DNA of 63,694 nucleotides, counting the filler, from Octopus bimaculoides (taxonomy: Eukaryota): assembly GCF_001194135.2 (NCBI RefSeq). It is 5 parts of 5 records of this genome, joined end to end, with 100 filler letters (N's around TTAATTAATTAA, not from the genome) between each part and the next. Parts side by side here need not be neighbours in the genome. Positions count along the whole stretch, not along the records: positions 18,975 to 34,756 come from NC_069001.1; 4 more parts are not named here. One strand, given 5' to 3'. Below, piece after piece: positions 18,988-34,756 of the stretch (the stretch's first letter is position 1; each line of letters begins with the position of its first letter). Position numbers and translations under genes: made by a program. The notes under the pieces are model-generated. The model was not told the DNA's origin. It did no database searches and saw only the letters and a list, made by a program, of their open reading frames with translations.

Positions 18988-19132
18988 TTTTATTCTTTTA
19001 TTTGTTTCAGTCATTAGACTGCGGCCATGCCGTGAGACCGCCTAACAGAAATTTTTAGTCAAATGACTCGGCCCCCGTACTTATTTTGCAAAGTCTGATA
19101 CTTATTCTATTACCTCTTTTGCCAAACCGCTA
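18988..19132 (-). mobile_element. SINE family A 3' fragment
   Basis: tttgtttcagtcattagactgcggccatgc ... cttttgccaaaccgctaa. Confidence 0.75.
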
Positions 19133-19135
<3 letters not shown>

Positions 19136-19194
<59 letters not shown>

Positions 19195-19197
19195 ATG

Positions 19198-19252
<55 letters not shown>

Positions 19253-19267
19253 GTCTGTCTATCTATC
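19136..19267. repeat. (TCTA)n microsatellite
   Basis: Visible tandem tcta units. Confidence 0.95.
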
Positions 19268-20550
19268 TGTTATATCCTTAAGTCTCCAGCATCATAGTAT
19301 GGTTGACGTTTGATAAAGAATAAACTGTAACAGTGTTACAAGAATACAAAATTGAAACAGCAGCAGTAACAAACATGCAACGAACCAACAATCTTTTACG
19401 AACCAACAATCAACATTTCCAACACACTAACTCGAACTGTAAAATGGACTTCGAAGACCAAACTATGAACTGTTGGCTATGTCAGACCACTACTATTTAC
19501 ATGTGGTAGCCCCATCTATTCCCGTCAGAGCGTGTCGTACGCGCGCCAAAACATCCCCGCTATTGAGATTTCGATTTCCAAAGGAATAAAGAAATTTATC
19601 AATGATATTAATATGCCACTTTGTTCTTTTTGTACGTACCTGTCGTATGTATCACACTTACCTGAAAGAAGAATTGAGTGGCAAAGAGAGAGAGAGGAGC
19701 ATAGAGAGGAAGTAAGAGAGAAAGAGAGAGTGATAAAAAGAGAGAGCGAAAGAGACAGTGAGTGGTAACGGCGCTTGTTTTGTTTTTAAATGAAAAGTAG
19801 ATACATAGATACATACACACATCGTTAAATTAAAAGCGGGAGAGAGGAGGGACACGCAGGAAGTGAAAGAGAAAGAGAAGGTGACAGAGACAGTAGATAC
19901 ATGAATCCAAAGAAAAGTTGATACATAGATATATAGAGACACAAATATTGGATGCCACTTTCACTTTTCATTACCCCACGAGGATATAGTTAACTCGAAG
20001 TGGTTGAATACTTCATGGACTTGCATATCATTAACAGAGTTCTCAGAGAGATTCAGCCTCACATAGCTCTCCGTTCTTCGGTATGTCTCTTCAGTAGGTG
20101 ATTTATCTGAGTCTTATGTTCCCAGCGTTTTTGTTGTAATATCTGCTTCTGCAACTCCTGTAGTTGTTCCTGTTGCTGTATTACTGCAGCTGATAGGTTC
20201 TCGATAATTTAATATGTGGTCTGGCGCACAAATTGTCAAATAACCTACGTGAGCTTCGAAAACTCCTCGTCGCCAGATGTTATATCCTTACGCCTCCAAT
20301 ATCGGTTGGTATTGTCGACGATAGATAAAGAATACACTGTAATAGTGTAATAAGAATACAAAATAGAAGAAGCAGCAGTAACAAACATACAACGAACCAA
20401 CAATGAATATGTTTTATGAACCAACAATGAATATTTCCAACACACTAACTCGAACTGTGCCTGAACTTCGAAGACGAAACTATGAACTGCCGACTACGTC
20501 AGACCGCTATCCCGTCTATTCTCGTCAGAAAGCGTCGTACTCAAGCGACA
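19268..20550 (-). mobile_element. Miniature or internally deleted LTR retrotransposon (Gypsy-like): 5' LTR 20550-20278, 3' LTR 19553-19268
   Basis: Two diverged direct repeats of 273 and 286 bp, each TGT...ACA on the minus strand. PBS TGGCGACGAGG at 20275-20265, 2 nt after the 5' LTR. Gag-like coiled coil IIENLSAAVIQQQEQLQELQKQILQQK downstream of the PBS. Short purine tract agcgggga directly before the 3' LTR. No TSD visible because both flanks are microsatellites. Confidence 0.72.
19656..19790 (-). promoter_or_regulatory. Perfect splice donor (CAG|GTAAGT) preceded by a long AG-free pyrimidine tract
   Basis: Minus strand ...ctctctctctttgccactcaattcttctttcag|gtaagtgtg, junction 19662/19661. 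No AG for about 110 nt upstream. Confidence 0.5.
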
Positions 20551-20604
20551 ACACACACACACATAGTCTGCCCCCCTCTCTCTCAATGTATATATATTAT
20601 ACTA

Positions 20605-20750
20605 TAGGCTTAGTTCAGTTTCCGTCTACCAAATCCATTCTCAGGCTTTTGTCGACCCGAGGCTGTAGTAGAAGACATTTGGTCTAGGTTCCTCGCAGTG
20701 TGACTGAACCTGGAACCATGTGGTTGGGAAGCAAGCTTCTTGCCACAATC
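20605..20750 (-). mobile_element. SINE family A 5' half
   Basis: cagtttccgtctaccaaatcc ... tagtagaagac ... gactgaacctggaaccatgtggttgggaagcaagc. Confidence 0.8.
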
Positions 20751-22181
20751 CACGTTCATACGGAGATTACACCTTTCACTGGTTCCTCTGCGTCTAAATG
20801 TTTTGTGGTACTCATTAGATTTCACATAATTATGTCTTTCAGTGGCCCAATAGCCTAAGGACAATTAAGCCAGTCTCTAATATATACCTAAATCGCTGTA
20901 TAGATCCGTCTATCAAATCTATATTCAATATCATTATGAAAAGCCGTTGAATGTAATGTACTACTATGTACACTTAACGTCATTGGTATACCTACCATGA
21001 CATCTCCATTTCTTTGAGTTCATTATACAGTTTTATTAATCGATTGATTAATCAACTGAAATGATAGGGAACCACGCTCACGGTGTTATCTTCATCAGAG
21101 CCAAAATAAATCAACTGCCAAAGAAAAAGAAGAAAAGAAAACAAAGAGGATGGTATTTCTTCAGTGTGCCATTTCTATTTCTATAGAACTAAGTCGCCTT
21201 TTTTTAATCATAGTGTTCTCTCTTAGCACGGGTTAATAGTATTGACATCCAGTACAGAAATTTGATACCCCACACCCGTGTAATGGCCAGTGGTAGGTTT
21301 TCGGTGTGTACTTCCATATTTGGTGTGTACTTATACGCACACACACACACACNNNNNNNNNNNNNNNNNNNNNNNNNNNNNNNNNNNNNNNNNNNNNNNN
21401 NNNNNNNNNNNNNNNNNNNNNNNNNNNNNNNNNNNNNNNNNNNNNNNNNNNNNNNNNNNNNNNNNNNNNNNNNNNNNNNNNNNNNNNNNNNNNNNNNNNN
21501 NNNNNNNNNNNNNNNNNNNNNNNNNNNNNNNNNNNNNNNNNNNNNNNNNNNNNNNNNNNNNNNNNNNNNNNNNNNNNNNNNNNNNNNNNNNNNNNNNNNN
21601 NNNNNNNNNNNNNNNNNNNNNNNNNNNNNNNNNNNNNNNNNNNNNNNNNNNNNNNNNNNNNNNNNNNNNNNNNNNNNNNNNNNNNNNNNNNNNNNNNNNN
21701 NNNNNNNNNNNNNNNNNNNNNNNNNNNNNNNNNNNNNNNNNNNNNNNNNNNNNNNNNNNNNNNNNNNNNNNNNNNNNNNNNNNNNNNNNNNNNNNNNNNN
21801 NNNNNNNNNNNNNNNNNNNNNNNNNNNNNNNNNNNNNNNNNNNNNNNNNNNNNNNNNNNNNNNNNNNNNNNNNNNNNNNNNNNNNNNNNNNNNNNNNNNN
21901 NNNNNNNNNNNNNNNNNNNNNNNNNNNNNNNNNNNNNNNNNNNNNNNNNNNNNNNNNNNNNNNNNNNNNNNNNNNNNNNNNNNNNCCTTCTTCAGCGTAC
22001 GACAATCGCCGACCTTCGATGCAAAAGGCATCCCTTGGCAAATATATATAAGTTTTTCCAGTGAAATTATTCACTGATATCGAAAAACTGAAAACAAGCA
22101 ATGTTAAATCTCTGAACGAGGTATTAACAGTAACTGCACGATAAAGTGAAGTATATTTGCCACTTAAATGTGGCTGACCCC

Positions 22182-22318: not shown

Positions 22319-24441
22319 CGTATCACTTGAATGCTGAAATGTTCGGTGGTTCCCCCGCGTCTAAATGTCTTGTGATATCATGATATTTTACCCAACTAAG
22401 TCATTCAAAATCAAATCGTGCAGAAAGTATTGGGATTTGTGAATTACTGAAGATACACAATGTTCAGGAGGTATGCTCGATTATAGTGTTCGTAATATAA
22501 CATTCGATCGAAATTGTTTTTCAGCTTGAAATTTTGATGAACGCAACTTCCCGAGAAGGTGTGCTAGTTACGTGATTGTTAAACTTTTGAGATATTGCTC
22601 AATGTCTTCTAATGTGAGTTATTTTATCTTGTTGACACAATGTAACAATTTGAACTCAACTGTATAACCCAACGGATGTGTCTGTCACTTAGATATTAAT
22701 AACATTGCTGTTGTTATTGATGTAACTGTAATTGTAGTTGTTTCGTCTTAGGCTGATCTATTTCAGAATCATTTCAGCTACATTCATACAGTTTTTTCTT
22801 CCAGGCATACTGAAACGTAGATTGCATGAGATTATTACATTTTTATGAAGGTAAGGTTTGATTTGAAAAAAATGTGGCTGCTGTTTCAAGCTGGTCATGA
22901 GGCCATATATTGATTCTGTCATTGGTTTGTGAGCTAACGTTGTTATTAATCAGGCAGAGCCTCCTCAATGCTGTCAATATTTTGAGCTAAGTAGAAGAAG
23001 CCGAAGCAAATATTATAGTTGTACTGAAAGAGTTGGAACTGCTTGCAAAAAGTCAGTTATTTCGATATTTCACCGATTATGGTTTCCATTTCGTTATGGA
23101 ATATTAAAAAAAAAACCCGTTCGACACATCGCTTAACAGCCTAAACATTTTTTCTCAAGAATTTAAATTCGTTTATTTTTTGTTGACTTTTTTAATGACG
23201 CCCATTTTCTACTGTTTGGCGCCTAAAATCTGATGAAAAAAAAACCAATGCACAAAGCCAACGTACAAAGAATACTGGGTTATGAGATATAAAAGAATTC
23301 AAGTATTTATTTTGTTTTATCATCGAACTGTTTATTTTTTAAACTTCGTTATTTTTTTTTAATCGTTTATTTTATATTTCTGTTATTACTTAGAACCCAA
23401 CAACATACCAACAATTGCTGAACGCAAACAGCACCACATCTACCCCATCTCCACCGTGTAATAGTATCGATCAAAATCTCTTTTAATGTAGAAAATAATT
23501 AATGAAAAAAATAAACAAACAAAAAAGAAACAAAACATATTTTGCACTGCTGGATATAATCTGCTTTCAAACGATTAAAAACTATGATTTTTAATTACTA
23601 AAAAAGATAAAGAAGAGAAGGTTAAAAATCTGTATCATCATTATCATCGACGTAGGCATCATCATCATCAGTATCATCATGATTATTATAGACACATTAA
23701 AAACATCTTCGATAATATCATTAACATCATCATTATCGTTAATGATCTTCTAACCTTATACGGTATATTCGTTCATTCTCATGTTTATACATATATACTC
23801 ACATCCATACTCACACGCGCATCCACACATATATACTTGCATGTATGCGTGCTTTTGTGTACAAGTGTGTTTCTTTATGTGCGTATATATTTGTATACAT
23901 ATGCATATGCGTGTAGTTCTGTGTGAATATACCTACATATTAACATGTATGTGTGTGTGTATGTCTGTATGTATGTGTGCGTGTGTGTGCATGTATGTAT
24001 GTAAGTATATGATGGTGAACAAATCTCCTACATCACAATGGATGGCCTCAGCAAAAAAAAAATATCGTATACGCTCAAACGAAACCGATAAGAAAAATCA
24101 CTTTTATCTTATGCATTAATAAACAATGCGTAGGCTATTAATTGTAATAAACAATGAAAAGCATTGTATGTCTAGCTGATGTTGATCGTCTATTGAAGGA
24201 TAGGTCACAAGATCAAACCGCCTGGTATTCATTGAGATTTAAGTAGGTCATATTAATAAAACTTTATAAATCTTAACTGATTTATTAAGTGTAGAGTCGG
24301 TTTCTCTAGATCATGATTCCCCAGATTTCCATTTAAATGTGATTTTAGAAAAAAAATATGCCTTTACTAATATGGGCTTTTCAATTACAGCTTTGCATGC
24401 CTGTGTATGCATGTGTTGGTGTGTGTGAGTGAGAGAAAGAC

Positions 24442-24444
<3 letters not shown>

Positions 24445-24492
<48 letters not shown>
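24445..24492. repeat. (GA)n microsatellite
   Basis: Visible tandem ga units. Confidence 0.95.
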
Positions 24493-24495
<3 letters not shown>

Positions 24496-24961
24496 TAAGT
24501 AAACTGAGAGAGGGAAAGGGGTGTGAGAGAGACAAATGTTGAGTGTACAAAAGAGGACAAACAAATGCGGATGCATGAAATTTACGCTCTTTTCAAATTT
24601 GAAGCTCAAGCTTCATGGCTTTACATTTCAAAGAACCGACTAGTGAACCCACATCTTCGAATATATCAATATATATATTTACATGCACATACGTGTATAA
24701 GATTGTATTTATAATCTGATCTATTTAACCTACCCCACTGTGATAGGTTAAATATACTCTCTCTCACACACACATAACAATATACTCTCCCACACACATA
24801 CTTAACACGTTTTAAGAAGAATCAGGTTTTAAGGGTGCTTTTCGTCACCATGTTGACCAAGACTGGATTTCTTACTCCCATTAGCAAAGAGGTTATATGC
24901 CTCCGACCATTAGCTCTGTCGAGTTGCCTATATTGCTAAGCGCAATAATAGATGTATATAC

Positions 24962-25004
<43 letters not shown>

Positions 25005-27501
25005 NNNNNNNNNNNNNNNNNNNNNNNNNNNNNNNNNNNNNNNNNNNNNNNNNNNNNNNNNNNNNNNNNNNNNNNNNNNNNNNNNNNNNNNNNNNNNNNN
25101 NNNNNNNNNNACATATATATAATATGAATATGTACATGTGCGTGGCTATATACACATTTGTATAGTGCAAATTCGACTTACGTTTAATATGACTCTACAC
25201 GACATTTATGTATATATGTAAGTATCCATATATCTATCAATATATTTATCTTGTGTGTGTATGTGTTTGTGAATGTGTGTGCCTGTGTGCGTGTGGGTGT
25301 GCGTGCGTGTCTATGCATGCGTGACTATGTGAGTTTTATGTCATTAAGATCATATCATTAATGCGATAAACGTCTTTTATGATATTTACAGTTTTGCAAT
25401 TTATATTTCAACTTGGATGGATTTTAATTTCTTACAGCGAGCAAATTGTCAATTAATTGGTTACGCTTGATATTGAGGGATTTCATTTAGAAATGGTGAC
25501 ATATTGTTCATAATCATTAAATAAATTATCTTAATTTTAATTCTTATATGCAACAAGACAAAGAGTTTTGTTATGATTCAAGTAGCAAGCGCGATGTGTT
25601 GTCTAGTTTACAATTTGCTTTAACTCACTCTTATTCCATTTTAATTTAATTTACGTTAATGTAAACTGCCGTCAGTTTCTATATTTCTATTCTGCATACA
25701 TATAGAGCAACATTAGTAAATCATATACATATTTCGATAATATATAATGTACTGATGATATTCTTCTTAAATTCTATACAATGTATCTCAAACTTCATAT
25801 TATTAAACAATGAACAATTGTTGTCAGGTCTCTTACACGAGATGAGATGCCATGTTTTAGAATGAGGTTTTTTAAATCACGTGCTATTAATATAATTTAA
25901 AGGGAAAACGAAATAAAGAAGACTGCAATAAAATAAAATACCTCCGATATTTTGAGATAAACCTTAGAGCTGGGACCTCACTCTGAATTTACGGATGATG
26001 TATATTTATTTAAGGTAGGCAATCTATCAAAAATCATATTCGCATATGAACTGCATACAAAAAGCAACATGTTATGCATTCATAGTGTTTGAACTCGCAC
26101 ACTGGTTGCTTGTAGGACAATATTCACTCTCAAAACATTGCTTCCTCTAAAACACATCTTTGAATGATTTCAATTTCAATTTTAAATTACTAAAAACAAA
26201 CAAAATTATGTAATAACACCACTCTGTTACGATTCGATAAGTCAATTTGAAATAAAACTTTGCTTGTAAATATTTTTCCTTTGATACTTTTGCTTTTTCT
26301 TTCAATAAATTTTACATTTCAGTAATATTTTGGCGTTTGTTTTATGCAGCTTTAAATGGTTCAACACACTTTGATAGGAAAAAGTAAAATACAAATGAAT
26401 ATGTAAAATAATCTGTTTATGGAAGTCGATCATAGTTTAGCATTTATATTTTGCTGCTTAACTATTGGCTACTACACCGTTTCATTCCGGTTAAGTATTC
26501 TGTTAACTAATAGCCTTGAAGGATTATTGATTGGTTTCTACTTGCAGAGGACCAACTATGGAATAGGATGGGCGCAATAATTTGCATCAATCAAATAATT
26601 GTGTTATGACAAGTTAATCGATGACTAAATGAGGAAAAGCGAATTCAAATCCTTTGGGACCTCCAAGGCGTAACTAAAAAGAATGTTACAAATATTTTTT
26701 TTGTCTATATCACCATTTGTCGGCAATTTGTGCAGCACATTAGTGTTGTTTATGGTACCATGTATAACAACATTGCGACTATGGCACCTCTCTCATCATT
26801 TATTCTTCTCACACATAAAACATATGGTGATGTATCTTCATTTCCTTAATTACATTTTCTTTATTGAGTATAATTGACGTAATAATTAGATTTATCTCAA
26901 TTTTGTTACCCGTAAACATTCCGCAATAGAAAGGAAGAAATTAATTTTGATAATTCTGGCTACTGATTTTTGATGATATTTCAAGTGGATTACTGCACAG
27001 TTTAATAATTTACAAGTATAATTACAGCTTGCCAAATTGGTAAAATGTTTTCATAGTAATTGGAGGTCTGTGGTTGATTGCCTCATCTAAGAAAGCACTT
27101 GCAATTCACTGTGGTAATACATCCAGTTGAATGATATACAATGTTTGGAGGTCCAGTACACATATATTCGGAACTATAGGACAATTAAGTTTACTGAAGA
27201 TTTGCTACACTGACGTTCTAATTCCCAAATCTCCCATTTTTCTATTGTAAGAAAATAACGGCTCCGCTGTGATTACATACAACAGGTTTACAAATGTCTT
27301 ATATCAGAATCCGTTAATTTGAACATGAAGTATAACTTGTTTCGTTGCTAGACATTATACAATTACAGAAAATGTTTCTACCCACACACAGATTTTAATG
27401 TGCTATCCTCATCTAGGTACAAGACATTATATACCTCCTCCTTCTCTTCTTAATGCGGCTGTTTTCTTCTTACACTTTCCGAAATGTCTTCAGTAATACT
27501 A

Positions 27502-28209
27502 CGAGGGGGTACCCAAAAGAAACCGGAATTTTGCAATGTTTACACCTTTATCGCCTTCCAAGTATTCTTCATTTGAAGCAATGCGTTGGTCCAGACGCGT
27601 TCTCCCCTGTTCAACGCAGTGCTGGAACTGTTGCGATGGGATGCCTTTTAACACTTCAATCTTTTCTTTCTTCACGTCTTCCACATCTGCAAATTCCGTA
27701 GCACCACCCTTCCTCACTAATGACCTTCAAAAAAAAAAAAGTCCGGATCAACTTCCAATTGTTCTTTCAGTTCACGACCCACATTCTGTTGTGACAGTTT
27801 TTGATCTTCCGTGAGCAAGCGAGGCACAAATTTTGCTGTAACTCTTTTCATTTTCATCGCTCAAACTTCGTTGGCAGGAATGCTGGTAAACTTGTGTTTT
27901 GCTCATGGCAACGTCTTTATAAGCTTTTTGAAGCATAACAACAGTATTGGCCGCTGTTTTCCCCCAACAGAAAACAGAATTTCACGGAAGCACGCAGTTC
28001 CTTCGTTTCGGTCATCGCAAAAATCGATGAAGAGGAGAGAAGCACTATAAAACAGGGATGCACCACGTGGCAGTACGACTACAGCTGATGTCGCGAGTTG
28101 GCAGACTGATGCCTGGAGTTGAATCAAGTGGCTTCTAGCGGTGGACACCCAAACTACAACGGGCTTGTCCCACAGAGAACTTTTCCGGTTGCTTTTGGGT
28201 ACCTCCTAC
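27502..28209 (-). mobile_element. Internally deleted mariner element with both TIRs and TA TSD
   Basis: TIRs cgagggggtacccaaaagaaaccggaa (27502) and ttccggttgcttttgggtacctcctac (to 28209), TA on both sides. Minus-strand peptide pieces: MTETKELRASVKFCFLLGKTAANTVVMLQKAYKDVAMSKTQVY, MKRVTAKFVPRLLTEDQK..DPDF..KVISEEGWCYG, FADVEDVKKEKIEVLKGIPSQQFQHCVEQGRTRLDQRIASNEEYLEGDK. Confidence 0.9.
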
Positions 28210-29084: not shown

Positions 29085-29520
29085 CGGATTAAAAGTATCC
29101 AATGATTAAAGCTAGTCGACTGGGGTTCCTTTTGTAGCAAAAGTGTTAGCCCTATTGGACAGTTTTTCTCGGAGTCAAAGTTGGCAATTACTAGCTGCAG
29201 GTGAGTGAAGAGGGATCCTGTGACCAACGAAAATTCCGTGACATGTTGCAGATATGATGCTTCATTAGTCACTAAGTATTCGTATAAAGGGAGACATGCA
29301 GGTAGAACTTCCATTGTCTTTATATCTGGAGGGGTGTATATATTGCTTATATATTCCCTTAAAATCTTCAGTAGTCAAGCTTCTTTCGGCGATACCATCG
29401 GACGTCATTTCGTGTGATGCCTTATAGTCCATAAGATTTGGGATGGAAGATCCTCCTGGTGGGCAATTATAAACATTCAGCATTTTCAAACTGGAGTTTA
29501 GGGCGGAGACTGTGCAGATA
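29085..29520 (-). mobile_element. Possible decayed apurinic-endonuclease domain of a LINE
   Basis: In order: LNVYNCPP (cf. VYRPP), EDFKG (cf. GDFN), HLQLVIAN (cf. LDLV..N), FNHWIL (cf. SDH), across frameshifts. Confidence 0.4.
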
Positions 29521-31423
29521 CGTGTTTCTATATTTTATAGTGAGCAGTTTGAAAACCGTATTATTTAAGTATGTGTAGCTAACATTAACGTTATGAGAAT
29601 TAAAAAAATTATGATAAATAGGTGTTCTTGGGGAGTATTTTATAAATTACGTCAGGAAGCTCAAAGGTCTACAAATGAAAAGATTGGACACCATTATATA
29701 TTTCACTTCTCTTCTAACTCAATTTCGATGACTATATATGGTGGTGCATTTTTAGAACTTGGAAGATAAGCTTTTGCCTAAAGCTCGAGTGTATAAGTTT
29801 AGTTAAAGTAAATTTTAAGTTCAATTGAAGTTGCATGAGAACCACATATTATGCAGAATCACAAGTACATCTGAAGGTACCTCATTTTAAAAATTCAGTA
29901 TCACTCTCTGCGCTGATAATCTGACATGCAAGCCGTCATTTCCTAAGTATAGTTGAATGAGGTAAACACAGAAAAATTAATTAAGTGGCATAGACGAATG
30001 ACAGAAGGTCAATGGAATACACGATTTCTTAATTATCTGTCTAACGTCAAAAACACCAAAGGCCAGCACTAGACAACTCCCCTGCTATCTCTAGTTACTG
30101 AAACTGGAAGTCACTAATTAGTGTGTAACATGGAAACTACTAGAGTATCGTCACCATACATGAGCGGAAGTAATATTTATTTATAGAGTGCTAAAACTAA
30201 TATTGAATCAATCTAGTTAACGAAATCTCTCACCTAATTGAAAATCTGCAGAATAAAAATCATAGAAGCTTGTCAAAATGCACTCTATGACCTCGTTGCA
30301 GCTGCCCCTGAGGGTACTGCTGAACTGAGTAGTAAACCATGACATCTACAAAACCTAAATACTTTAAGACAAATACCATAATTGATGGTAGAGACCTTCT
30401 CTCCATATATTGCAGGCTAGAGTGGCACGTAAAACTTACTGGGAGCCTAACGAAAGAAAAATATATGCAAGATTTTACAATCGAAAATTACTTATTTAAA
30501 CATATACATAATAGTGGATGCCACACATTCAAAGAACAGAATTAAATAAGAAATTTATCGAAAAGGGAAACCCCCAAATAGAACGGGACAGGTAAAAGGG
30601 ACAAAGGGAAAATCCTTAGAGCAGAGATTGCGATAATTGCAGGGGATATAGAAAATGCTTTTTTTCGGATCTAAGGACCGCTACCATCAACAAACCGAAC
30701 ATGTACATGAACACATATATTTTGATTCTTATTAGGATCTTTTCATGTTTATTATAATATTTTCCCTCCATCCGCTTCTGTCACCCTTGTCTCACAATTT
30801 GTTTCAATTCTCAAATTCTACTTCCCTCCACAATCTTATTGTTTACCACTTGATGACGTGCAAAAAAATATTCATATCTACATGTATACAAACGTGCGCG
30901 CGCACACAAAAACACACACATACCTATGTAACTACACCCATGTTGTTTGCGATTTCTTTTCCTTCTTTGGACTTTTCTCTTTCCCCTCTCCGACGAAGAG
31001 CTATGTTTGAAACGTCAAAATCTCTCTTCTTACCGAGTGTTAATACATTCCTTGTGCGCACATCCTCTTAATGTCCGTTAGTTTTATTATTCGTCTATTT
31101 GATTTTATTATTTGAACTGACTATATATATATATATATATATNNNNNNNNNNNNNNNNNNNNNNNNNNNNNNNNNNNNNNNNNNNNNNNNNNNNNNNNNN
31201 NNNNNNNNNNNNNNNNNNNNNNNNNNNNNNNNNNNNNNNNNNNNNNNNNNNNNNNNNNNNNNNNNNNNNNNNNNNNNNNNNNNNNNNNNNNNNNNNNNNN
31301 NNNNNNNNNNNNNNNNNNNNNNNNNNNNNNNNNNNNNNNNNNNNNNNNNNNNNNNNNNNNNNNNNNNNNNNNNNNNNNNNNNNNNNNNNNNNNNNNNNNN
31401 NNNNNNNNNNNNNNNNNNNNNNN

Positions 31424-31461
<38 letters not shown>

Positions 31462-32293
31462 GAGGGAATTTTATGTATTTTTTGTATCTTATTTGTTCTT
31501 CGATTTAGGACAACAGAAAAGATTATCTGCATTTTCTCATTCCTGAAATTAAAACTTGAGAGGCGAAATGAAGATAATTCGCACTTACTATGAATTATTA
31601 GTCTTAACGGAAATAACCGCGTTTATACATATATCTTTCATGTCTTTAGAATATGCTTTTCTGCCATATTTTCTTAAAAGTTATATTTATTTTCACAGCC
31701 AACATCTGACAACAATCGTGTATGCCACATTGTCTTAACTCGTTTTCACGCATTTATCTTTTTCTCTATTATCTTCATTTAATGGAATATTTATTAGGGT
31801 CTTGTTTAACTGAATTTTCTGACTGATTTCGCTTTTAAGGTCAATAAATTATATCTAATAGTTGAAATGACCTTGTAATAAGTTTTATGAAATTTGCACA
31901 AGCAATTTGGTCAAATTCTATTACAATTAACCAAACAATCCCGAGACCTAATCCTACTGGAAATAAGCTACAAAGCGAAGAAATAAAAAAAAAACGGTGT
32001 TACCAGCAAAAACAATGAAACACTGGGGAAAAAAGCGATTTTCAGGATTTAATTCCGTAAATTGAAAGGCGTTGAATTTGCATATCACGTTTTATCTGTT
32101 CGATAAAAATAGTGCAGTCATATTCTCGTATCGATTCAATATCCTATAGTGATTACATCCTATCAAGCGAATGGCTTTATGCCAAAGCAAGAACCACTTA
32201 AAAGCAGCAAGTTTAGTAATAGTTCAGATAGTAATAGTAGTTATGGTGGTGGTAGTAGTAATAGGAGTGGTTAGGGAGGAATAGCAGCAGTCA

Positions 32294-32508: not shown

Positions 32509-32940
32509 TTAATAGTAGCAGTCATTTTAATGTCTGTAGCAGCGGCATTAACAGTAGCAGCAGCAGCAGCGGCGGCGGCGGCAGAGGCAGCAGCAACAGT
32601 GGTAACAGCAGTAGCAGCTACAGCAGCAGAAGTGTGTAGTAGTAGCAGCAGAAGTAGTAGTAGCAGCAATAGTTTTAATAATGGATCTCTATAATTTTTT
32701 TCTTGCTACTTAAAATATTTCACCAGATTAAAATTTTTACCAGATTGGAGGCTTATGATTGGCTCAAATTACATAACTTTCAATTCTTGTAATTTCTTTA
32801 TACTTAATTTCTAAAGATGAAATAATAAGAAAAAAATGAACGTTATTTTCGTCATCGGCATGCAAAACTGCATCAGAACTACATCTTTTGAAACTAATAT
32901 GGTAAAAGCTTGAAATACTTCAAGTAGCTGGCAGAAATTT

Positions 32941-33013
<73 letters not shown>

Positions 33014-33030
33014 TGTTGTTGTTGTTGTTG
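32941..33030. repeat. (TAG)n then (GTT)n microsatellite
   Basis: Visible tandem units. Confidence 0.95.
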
Positions 33031-33384
33031 TGCTATTCAATGTTGTCACAAAATTCCATTCAATTTGCTTTGTTTCTTGTAAAAATCTCATCTTATTAAA
33101 CACATTATCGTTCTTACCTCATGTACGTATTATTATTCTTTCATTCAAGTCATTCGATAGCAGCTATACTAACACATCAGTTTCAAGTGTGGTCCTAACA
33201 AATTCTGTTTTAGTGTATCCATTTATATTTATCGACTGATTTACTTCCGGCAAGGAATAATAATGACCACAAGGAGCTTGTCCAAAGCAACGATTTATTG
33301 GCATTTCATTGTGATATATGCATATGCAACCGTACATAAGCACAAACTCATGCGCATATGCACACACAAACACATTGATGCACA

Positions 33385-34034: not shown

Positions 34035-34712
34035 CACGAATGTATTTATAAAATAAAATCATTAAAATTAATTTTATCAATGGCCAGCATATAAAAATCT
34101 TTTAGGTAAAATACATGTATAGAGACATATAACTGTATAGGGTACAATTATATTTAATGATATAAAAGTGACAGGACGTATTCGGTGCGTTCTTTCAGCA
34201 TATAGGTATAATAGCTTTTATGCCAGTTATCTCTTTCTTTCTCTCTTTTCTCTCTCTAACTCTCTCTCTCTCTCTCTCNNNNNNNNNNNNNNNNNNNNNN
34301 NNNNNNNNNNNNNNNNNNNNNNNNNNNNNNNNNNNNNNNNNNNNNNNNNNNNNNNNNNNNNNNNNNNNNNNNNNNNNNNNNNNNNNNNNNNNNNNNNNNN
34401 NNNNNNNNNNNNNNNNNNNNNNNNNNNNNNNNNNNNNNNNNNNNNNNNNNNNNNNNNNNNNNNNNNNNNNNNNNNNNNNNNNNNNNNNNNNNNNNNNNNN
34501 NNNNNNNNNNNTCTCTCCTCTCTCTCTCTCTCTAACGTATATACATACATATACATATATATGCATATACTCATATATTGTTTGTATCACGACAGAACGC
34601 ACGCGTTACCTTTACACAGTCAGTTTTTAACTATTTTTCTAACGCGGCTCTCTCTATTTCTATCTCCCCCTCTCATTCTTCCCTCTACTGTTCTTCGCCT
34701 CTACCTGTCACT

Positions 34713-34756
<44 letters not shown>

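What the first reader, a model, noticed from the sequence alone, without database searches (positions are those of the whole stretch)
19656..19790. Textbook recursive-splicing (ratchet) motif on the minus strand
A ~110-nt AG-free, pyrimidine-rich tract with yTnAy branch candidates (cttac at ~19712, ctcac at ~19760) ends in ttcttctttCAG and is followed immediately by GTAAGT. This zero-length-exon AG|GT architecture defines recursive splice sites in long Drosophila and vertebrate introns. It is the strongest such junction I found on either strand. Weaker minus-strand AG|GT junctions occur at ~54962, ~36638, ~30232 and ~6848, and could form a stepwise series through a very long intron. I am not aware of recursive splicing being characterised in cephalopods.
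Basis: partly seen in the sequence, partly recalled or inferred. Interest (0 to 1): 0.7.

Follow-up and report, generated by a model that had tools for sequence, protein, structure and literature searches.

The report
Splice-site look-alike beside a decayed microsatellite
A perfect back-to-back splice acceptor/donor motif is really there, but it sits at the end of a decayed CT microsatellite in repeat-rich non-coding DNA. Nothing available shows it is transcribed, conserved or used, so it is more likely a chance look-alike than a recursive splice site.

Summary
On the minus strand, a 110-nt AG-free tract (80-89% pyrimidine) ends in ttcttctttCAG and abuts GTAAGT, with the junction between 19662 and 19661. 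It is the best of 72 AG|GT junctions in the piece and is rarer than shuffles predict (1 observed, 0.03 expected).

The interpretation cannot be established. The pyrimidine tract is a degenerate (CT)n microsatellite and part of a locally duplicated low-complexity unit. It lies among interspersed repeats, other (GA)n/(TC)n arrays and assembly gaps. Consensus branch points lie only at -52, -73 and -98. No exon homolog was found on either strand of the 15.8-kb piece, so neither a host gene, its strand nor a long intron can be shown. No orthologous DNA or RNA data were reachable.

Extrapolating this piece's statistics gives roughly 60-400 equally good chance motifs in a 2.7-Gb genome. In human, under 1% of motif-plus-conservation candidates had junction reads in that study's own data.

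Best reading: an unselected, chance splice-site look-alike (about 0.6). A genuine recursive site stays possible (about 0.13).

The parts
19656..19664 (-). CAG|GTAAGT: acceptor AG at 19663-19662 directly abutting donor GTAAGT at 19661-19656. The 9-mer is fully complementary to the U1 snRNA 5' end (established knowledge).
   Evidence: Read. It is the only AGGTAAGT in the piece. CAGGTRAGT occurs twice against 0.12 expected.
19664..19773 (-). 110-nt AG-free tract, 85% pyrimidine (46% T, 38% C), ending ...aattcttctttc before the AG.
19685..19755 (+). Degenerate (AG)n / (AGAGAAAGAGAG)n microsatellite. It is the purine-strand view of the core of the pyrimidine tract.
   Evidence: TRF reports 64-68% matches. 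Its only similarities elsewhere in the piece are to (GA)n/(TC)n arrays at 24427-24518, 31424-31467, 34230-34275 and 34715-34756.
19712..19716 (-). CTTAC, the nearest yTnAy branch-point candidate (A at 19713, position -52).
19758..19762 (-). CTCAC branch-point candidate (A at 19759, position -98). A third candidate, TTTAT, has its A at 19734 (-73).
19634..19642 (-). Second AG|GT junction, CAG|GTACGT, 22 nt downstream. It could serve as the weaker donor of a 22-nt cryptic 'RS-exon' (19661-19640).
   Evidence: Other donor-like sites lie at +122 and +162.
19833..19884 (.). Local paralogue of the tract core (77% identity to 19683-19733). Together with 19909-19941 versus 19789-19821 (85%), it shows a tandem duplication of a low-complexity unit of about 120-150 nt. 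The upstream copy does not end in AG|GT.
19268..19552 (.). Interspersed-repeat copy 1; copy 2 lies at 20280-20540. Homology ends about 110 nt downstream (in minus-strand sense) of the junction, so the junction itself is not inside the shared repeat.

Best explanation
The motif is an unselected splice-site look-alike.

Proposed origin: a (CT)n microsatellite decayed into a 110-nt CT-rich tract. Such a tract is AG-free simply because it contains almost no purines. It abuts a GT/AT-rich low-complexity segment (gtaagtgtgatacatac...). That segment resembles the head of the neighbouring duplicated unit (gatgtgtgtatgtatctatgtatc). A few substitutions at this boundary would give CAG|GTAAGT.

Consequence: the element has no evolved role. 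If the minus strand happens to be transcribed as part of an intron, the spliceosome could use it occasionally as a cryptic or noise-level acceptor/donor. That would be a by-product, not a ratchet mechanism.

Shown: the motif, its microsatellite nature, the local duplication, the repeat-rich setting, and the absence of detectable exons.
Inferred: the mutational origin and the lack of function.
For: - TRF calls the tract a degenerate (AG)n array.
- Its only similarities in the piece are to other (GA)n/(TC)n arrays and to its own local duplicate.
- The piece has six further GA/TC arrays, and 12.8% of its non-N bases lie in tandem repeats.
- 4 of the 9 pyrimidine-rich AG-free contexts in the piece end in CAG, for example the (GA)n array at 24505 with cctctctcag.
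- GTRAGT hexamers recur inside GT/AT-rich low-complexity DNA, for example at 24001, 24425, 25218, 23802 and 23814.
- No yTnAy lies between -18 and -50, whereas branch points map to -21..-36 in flies (10.1101/006163) and 20-50 nt in human (PMC6110456).
- No exon homolog was found on either strand, and there is no Rfam family or tRNA.
- Extrapolation gives about 60-400 equally good chance motifs per 2.7 Gb.
- Human base rate: 36,870 putative sites, 342 with junction reads, 16 with a sawtooth (PMC6110456).
- Simple repeats make up 14.7% of an octopus genome (PMC6279123).
Against: - Within this piece the full motif is unexpected: 0.03 expected by shuffles and about 0.002 from real-context counting.
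- CAGGTRAGT occurs twice against 0.12 expected, and 0 of 100 shuffles reached 2. That hints at least one may be a real splice donor.
- TT at -5/-6, present in 99.5% of fly ratchet points (10.1101/006163), is present here.
- A weaker donor follows 22 nt downstream, as the RS-exon model requires.
- A 110-nt AG-exclusion zone would in principle permit the distal branch points at -52, -73 and -98.
- The junction and its downstream 100 nt are unique within the piece.
Confidence: 0.62

Rival explanations
1. It is a genuine recursive splice site (ratchet point) in a long intron of a minus-strand gene. The upstream exon is first spliced to the AG at 19662. That regenerates exon|GTAAGT, which then serves as the donor for removing the rest of the intron. 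Recognition may be helped by a cryptic RS-exon ending at the weaker donor 22 nt (or 121 or 161 nt) downstream.
For: - All motif-level hallmarks are present: AG|GT, a long pyrimidine tract, TT at -5/-6, a perfect regenerated donor, and a weaker downstream donor.
- The motif is rarer than chance for this piece.
- No exon was detected within 15.8 kb, which is compatible with a long intron.
- Recursive splicing occurs in both flies and vertebrates (10.1101/006163, PMC8605326), so it could be ancestral to bilaterians.
Against: - There is no evidence of a host gene, of minus-strand transcription or of intron length.
- Conservation is a hallmark of known sites: 'ultraconserved' in PMC8605326, and about twice control AGGT sites in PMC6110457. 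It could not be tested, and a decaying, locally duplicated microsatellite is not the usual setting.
- Consensus branch points lie outside the usual window.
- The tract is CT-rich (38% C) rather than U-rich. From general knowledge, such tracts bind PTB-type repressors at least as well as U2AF.
- A 22-nt RS-exon is well under the ~50 nt typical in flies (PMC8605326).
- The expected chance background is about 60-400 per genome.
- A possible plus-strand exon at 29138-29200 would make this motif antisense.
Confidence: 0.13
2. It is an ordinary 5' splice site. The CT-rich tract would be the 3' end of an unannotated non-coding or UTR exon, perhaps a first exon, on the minus strand. The intron would begin at GTAAGT (19661).
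For: - CAG|GTAAGT is the optimal donor.
- CAGGTRAGT is enriched in the piece, 2 observed against 0.12 expected.
- From composition, about 19,000 chance CAGGTAAGT are expected per 2.7 Gb. That is the same order as my rough estimate of several thousand real perfect donors, so any single instance has a non-trivial prior.
Against: - The 110 nt upstream is low-complexity and would encode only L/S/F repeats.
- ORFs across it have no homolog and no record in the collections.
- An internal exon would need an acceptor at or beyond 19775, where the local context is A-rich (aaaacaag|c).
- There is no CpG- or GC-rich promoter-like signature upstream.
- Exons ending in 110 nt of AG-free, 85% pyrimidine sequence should be rare (inference).
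Confidence: 0.08
3. It is an ordinary or alternative 3' splice site of an expressed exon that happens to begin with GTAAGT. Examples would be a 22-nt microexon ending at CAG|GTACGT, or an expressed RS-exon of the vertebrate type.
For: - The acceptor context is strong.
- A donor-like CAG|GTACGT lies 22 nt downstream, and further donor-like sites lie at +122 and +162.
- Mammals may have thousands of expressed RS-exons (PMC8605326).
Against: - No coding homolog exists for any downstream frame; the segments covering 19496-19651 were included in the search.
- The chance that a real exon starts with GTAAGT is about 2-3e-4.
- A 22-nt exon is atypical.
Confidence: 0.03

Closest known systems
Drosophila intronic ratchet points (zero-nucleotide-exon recursive splice sites; Hatton 1998, Burnette 2005, Duff 2014/2015, Pai 2018, Joseph 2018/2021)
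   Same: Juxtaposed acceptor and donor. A prominent pyrimidine tract with TT at -5/-6. A strong regenerated GTAAGT donor. A weaker donor a short distance downstream.
   Different: Fly sites lie in introns of 11 kb or more in expressed genes. They are strongly conserved, have branch points at -21..-36, and are backed by junction, sawtooth and lariat reads (10.1101/006163, PMC6110457, PMC8605326). Here none of the context or RNA features is known. Branch-point consensus matches lie at -52 or further. The tract is a decayed, locally duplicated (CT)n microsatellite.
Vertebrate recursive splice sites and RS-exons (Sibley 2015; Zhang 2018, PMC6110456)
   Same: An AGGT core, a strong 3' splice site, and a donor-competition architecture with a downstream 5' splice site.
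   Different: Vertebrate sites are defined by conservation plus junction reads in very long introns (median 329 kb for sawtooth sites). Only 342 of 36,870 motif-plus-conservation candidates had junction reads in the study's own data. None of these criteria could be applied here.
Cryptic splice sites and pseudoexons arising from repeats or low-complexity DNA in long introns (for example DMD pseudoexons, PMC7175933; Alu exonization, from general knowledge)
   Same: Consensus-like splice signals generated by neutral sequence in non-coding, repeat-rich DNA. They would be usable only at noise level, if at all.
   Different: Those cases are documented by transcripts. Here usage is unknown.
Compound or degenerate dinucleotide microsatellites ((CT)n adjoining GT/AT-rich arrays)
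   Same: Detected by TRF. Similar only to other GA/TC arrays in the piece. Locally duplicated. Assembly gaps and piece ends abut such arrays.
   Different: The 9-nt CAGGTAAGT at the boundary is not itself repetitive.

Membership tests
Recursive splice site / ratchet point | Juxtaposed 3' splice-site AG and 5' splice-site GT (AG|GT) | tested here: met
   AG at 19663-19662 and GT at 19661-19660 on the minus strand.
Recursive splice site / ratchet point | Strong acceptor: a prominent pyrimidine tract, with TT at -5/-6 (99.5% of fly sites) | tested here: met
   80-89% Y over 20-100 nt, AG-free for 110 nt, and TT at -5/-6 (criterion from 10.1101/006163). Caveat: the tract is 38% C.
Recursive splice site / ratchet point | A strong regenerated 5' splice site immediately after the AG | tested here: met
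   GTAAGT matches 6 of 6 positions and is the best of 72 AG|GT junctions.
Recursive splice site / ratchet point | Branch point at the usual distance (-21..-36 in flies; 20-50 nt in human) | tested here: inconclusive
   A consensus scan finds yTnAy only at -52, -73 and -98. Branch points are degenerate and a long AG-exclusion zone allows distal ones, so this weakens the case without excluding it.
Recursive splice site / ratchet point | A downstream cryptic RS-exon with a weaker competing donor (about 50 nt in flies) | tested here: inconclusive
   CAG|GTACGT lies at +23, giving a 22-nt exon. Weaker donor-like sites lie at +122 and +162. This is compatible but short, and could be chance in GT/AT-rich sequence.
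Recursive splice site / ratchet point | Lies on the sense strand inside a long intron (at least 5-11 kb) of a transcribed gene | not testable with these tools
   No annotation or RNA data were available. No exon homolog was found on either strand of the 15.8-kb piece. That fits an intron or intergenic DNA equally well. Exons shorter than about 30 aa would have been missed.
Recursive splice site / ratchet point | Evolutionary conservation of the motif relative to flanking intron | not testable with these tools
   No cephalopod DNA was reachable: ORF look-ups, a protein search and exact-match metagenome scans all returned nothing. Indirectly, the tract is a duplicated, decaying microsatellite.
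Recursive splice site / ratchet point | RNA evidence: exon-to-site junction reads, sawtooth coverage, lariats | not testable with these tools
   No transcriptome data are accessible.
Ordinary 5' splice site of an exon | Consensus MAG|GTRAGT donor | tested here: met
   CAG|GTAAGT.
Ordinary 5' splice site of an exon | An upstream exon with coding potential, a plausible acceptor or promoter, or transcript support | tested here: inconclusive
   The upstream 110 nt is low-complexity. ORFs across it have no homologs. The nearest upstream AG (19775) has an A-rich context. There is no CpG signature. A non-coding exon cannot be excluded.
Degenerate microsatellite / low-complexity tandem duplication | Detected as a tandem array, similar to other simple repeats of the same motif, with local duplication | tested here: met
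   TRF array 19685-19755. Blastn hits fall only on GA/TC arrays and on the tract's own duplicate at 19833-19884.

The most novel reading that the evidence does not exclude
The site is a bona fide zero-nucleotide recursive splice site in a long intron of a cephalopod gene. It would be the first described in Lophotrochozoa, and it would have been built from a decayed (CT)n microsatellite. That would suggest recursive splicing is ancestral to bilaterians, and that simple repeats can seed new ratchet points in expanding introns.
Probability: 0.12. Interest if true: 0.45.

Novelty: not a real feature. Interest (0 to 1): 0.12.

Why it matters
If it were real, it would extend recursive splicing from flies and vertebrates to a mollusc. 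Coleoid genomes and neural genes are large, so it would also offer a case of a ratchet point born from a microsatellite. No paper in the searched library links recursive splicing with cephalopods.

A single motif match cannot carry that claim. The mechanism is already well described elsewhere. Hundreds of equally good chance motifs are expected per genome. The decisive data (RNA-seq, annotation, orthologous alignment) are public but outside the reach of these tools.

The practical value of this check is to show that long AG-free pyrimidine tracts in such genomes are mostly decayed (CT)n repeats. Motif-only calls of recursive sites there need a sense-versus-antisense control.

Tried and rejected
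1. Exact look-ups of the three ORFs spanning the motif (94 aa and 70 aa on minus, 78 aa on plus) in the assembly/Logan gene index: none on record.
2. Homology search with the 78-aa plus-strand ORF: no hit.
3. Exon hunt. All stop-free, non-low-complexity segments of at least 30 aa were concatenated per strand. The mariner-like and SINE-like regions were excluded.
   - Minus strand, 2,973 aa: no hit at E<=1e-3.
   - Plus strand, 3,808 aa: no hit.
   - Caveat: exons under about 30 aa and non-coding exons are invisible to this test.
4. Rfam at permissive E-values: only sub-threshold hits of (TG)n arrays to mir-297/mir-3149. ARAGORN: no tRNA.
5. Exact-match scans of JGI metagenome contigs for the junction 25-mer and for a 26-mer conserved between the two interspersed-repeat copies: 0 matches each. 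No orthologues or paralogues were obtained.
6. Whether the junction lies inside the interspersed repeat: rejected, because homology between the copies ends about 110 nt away.
7. CpG observed/expected and GC profile, looking for a promoter upstream of a possible first exon: nothing distinctive; the piece-wide CpG o/e is 0.82.
8. Strand skews as a hint of transcription direction: no consistent sign across the piece.
9. The idea of a U1 snRNA gene (the plus strand reads ACTTACCTG): rejected. This is simply the complement of the donor consensus, and Rfam finds no U1.
10. Only 30233 is in this piece and it is weak. The others belong to unrelated pieces.

Full report
**What is there.** The minus strand reads ...tctcttacttcctctctatgctcctctctctctctttgccactcaattcttctttCAG|GTAAGTgtgatacatacgacag|gtacgtac.... 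The acceptor AG is at 19663-19662 and GTAAGT at 19661-19656.
- The next AG upstream is at 19775-19774, so 110 nt are AG-free.
- Pyrimidines make up 80% of the last 20 nt, 85% of 40 nt, 89% of 80 nt and 85% of 110 nt.
- Positions -5 and -6 are TT.
- yTnAy pentamers place their A at -52 (CTTAC, A19713), -73 (TTTAT) and -98 (CTCAC, A19759). None lies between -18 and -50.
- AGGTAAGT occurs once in the piece on either strand.
- Among 72 scorable AG|GT junctions this one is first on every descriptor.

**Is it more than chance?** For this piece, yes; for a genome, no.
- The tool's dinucleotide shuffles give 0.03 expected matches to YYYYYYYYNYAGGTRAGT (up to 1 mismatch) against 1 observed.
- Shuffles destroy microsatellites, so I also counted real contexts. 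The piece holds 9 AGs preceded by at least 40 nt of AG-free sequence with at least 75% Y. Three of them are as long and as pyrimidine-rich as this one, and four end in CAG.
- GTAAGT occurs at 2.4e-4 per position and GTRAGT at 5.5e-4. That gives about 0.002-0.005 expected per piece.
- Scaled to 2.7 Gb this is about 60-400 equally good motifs by chance. This is a crude extrapolation from one piece.
- The first-stage scan picked the best junction after the fact, from an unknown number of windows.

**What the tract is.**
- TRF calls 19685-19755 a degenerate (AG)n / 12-mer array with 64-68% matches.
- Blastn of 19553-19990 against the piece finds similarity only to the (GA)n/(TC)n arrays at 24427-24518, 31424-31467, 34230-34275 and 34715-34756, and to a local duplicate.
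- The duplicate pairs are 19683-19733 with 19833-19884 (77%) and 19789-19821 with 19909-19941 (85%).
- The pyrimidine tract therefore belongs to a tandemly duplicated low-complexity unit of about 120-150 nt. On the minus strand each unit has a (TATG/TATC)-like head followed by a CT-rich body.
- The upstream copy's tract ends in ...cccgcttttaatttaacgatgtgtg, not in AG|GT.
- Directly after the junction comes gtaagtgtgatacatacgacaggtacgtac. This looks like a further, decayed head segment. GTRAGT hexamers recur in such GT/AT-rich low-complexity DNA elsewhere in the piece, at 24001, 24425, 25218, 23802 and 23814.
- A plausible origin is thus a compound (CT)n / (GT·AT)n boundary that drifted into CAG|GTAAGT. 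This is inference.

**Surroundings.**
- The piece is a draft scaffold fragment with four N gaps, each abutting a microsatellite. 12.8% of its non-N bases lie in tandem repeats.
- An interspersed repeat at 19268-19552 has a second copy at 20280-20540. Homology stops about 110 nt from the junction, so the junction is not part of that shared element.
- A decayed mariner/Mos1-like remnant lies at about 27500-28080 on the minus strand. Pfam HTH_48 scores E=2.6e-4, which is below the curated cutoff.
- There is no Rfam family above threshold and no tRNA.
- No stop-free segment of at least 30 aa on either strand has any homolog among 5.8 billion proteins. ORFs across the motif have none either.
- No coding exon is therefore detectable in 15.8 kb. 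That fits a long intron and intergenic DNA equally well. Short or non-coding exons would have been missed.

**Comparison with known recursive sites.**
- Fly ratchet points have AG|GT, an unusually prominent pyrimidine tract, TT at -5/-6 in 99.5% of cases, and branch points at -21..-36. They lie in introns of at least 11 kb, are conserved, and are supported by junction, sawtooth and lariat reads (10.1101/006163; PMC6110457).
- They also need a short cryptic RS-exon (about 50 nt) with a weaker downstream donor, and the acceptor|donor motif is described as ultraconserved (PMC8605326).
- Human sites are defined the same way. In that work, 36,870 candidates (AGGT in a long intron, strong acceptor, conserved) yielded 342 with junction reads in the study's data and 16 with a sawtooth. 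The branch-point motif was enriched 20-50 nt upstream (PMC6110456).
- Here the motif-level criteria are met. The branch-point and RS-exon criteria are inconclusive: the nearest consensus branch point is at -52, and the nearest donor gives a 22-nt exon.
- The defining contextual criteria (sense strand of a long intron, conservation, RNA evidence) cannot be tested with these tools. Exact scans of metagenome contigs for the junction and for the nearby repeat found nothing.

**Weighing.** These figures are inference.
- The chance background is about 60-400 per genome.
- If octopus had a fly-like complement of about 500 ratchet points, perhaps 15-30 would combine an exact CAG|GTAAGT with so long a tract. 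With a mammal-like complement of fully suppressed sites, there would be only a few.
- The microsatellite and duplication context and the distal branch points favour chance. TT at -5/-6 and the nearby weaker donor favour function. These roughly cancel.
- I therefore put a selected recursive site at about 0.13, an ordinary donor of an unannotated non-coding or first exon at about 0.08, an ordinary acceptor or expressed RS-exon at about 0.03, and an unselected look-alike at about 0.6.
- The look-alike might still be used at noise level if it lies in a sense-transcribed intron. In human, 60% of putative sites had at least some junction reads in 70 billion ENCODE reads (PMC6110456).

**One observation cuts both ways.** CAGGTRAGT occurs twice in the piece (19656-19664 on minus, 29198-29206 on plus) against 0.12 expected, and 0 of 100 shuffles reached two.
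- The plus-strand copy closes a 63-nt exon-like interval, ttccttttgtag|CAAAAG...GCTGCAG|GTGAGT, at 29138-29200.
- If that is a real exon of a plus-strand gene, the minus-strand motif is antisense and cannot be a ratchet point for it.
- If neither is real, the pair is a roughly 1-in-100 coincidence.

**The 'stepwise series'.** The junctions at ~54962, ~36638 and ~6848 therefore cannot belong to the same intron. The single in-piece partner (30233) is weak.

**Novelty and verdict.** The evidence is a single motif match in low-complexity DNA. I rate it as most likely not a real functional feature, with low interest. It is easily settled by public RNA-seq, annotation and cross-species alignment. 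A genome-wide count of such motifs on the sense versus antisense strand of long introns would settle whether recursive sites exist as a class.

Noticed in passing
window 29138-29206 (+): A 63-nt exon-like interval bounded by an acceptor-like ttccttttgtag| and a perfect donor ctgCAG|GTGAGT. This is the second CAGGTRAGT in the piece (2 observed, 0.12 expected). Two frames are open, and no homolog was found, although 21 aa is too short to detect. If it is a real exon it implies a plus-strand gene here.
   Followed up: partly
window ~27500-28080 (-): A decayed mariner/Mos1-type transposon remnant. Frame-shifted pieces resemble the N-terminal HTH and the C-terminal end of a mariner transposase. The stitched translation hits Pfam HTH_48 at E=2.6e-4 and 21.5 bits, below the 24.1 cutoff. 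There is no PDB sequence hit. The region is the most GC-rich in the piece (0.43-0.47).
   Followed up: partly
window 19268-19552 and 20280-20540; also 19005-19131 and 20600-20770: Two copies, about 1 kb apart, of an interspersed repeat with 85-92% identity in its blocks. They are flanked by sequences that I recognise from memory as resembling the two halves of the abundant octopus SINE; this was not tested. A 34-copy (ATCT)n array at 19133-19268 lies between the first half and copy 1.
   Followed up: partly
window 21338-21353, 24955-25005, 31122-31143, 31423-31464, 34230-34279, 34511-34533, 34716-34756: Every assembly gap (N run) and the right end of the piece abuts a microsatellite: (CA)n, (TATA)n, (TA)n, (GA)n or (TC)n. 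The assembly therefore breaks at simple repeats, and the true array lengths are unknown.
   Followed up: no
window 32552-33031: A cluster of trinucleotide arrays: a degenerate (CAG)26 at 32552-32629, a perfect (AGT)24 at 32942-33013, and (GTT)6.7 directly after it.
   Followed up: no
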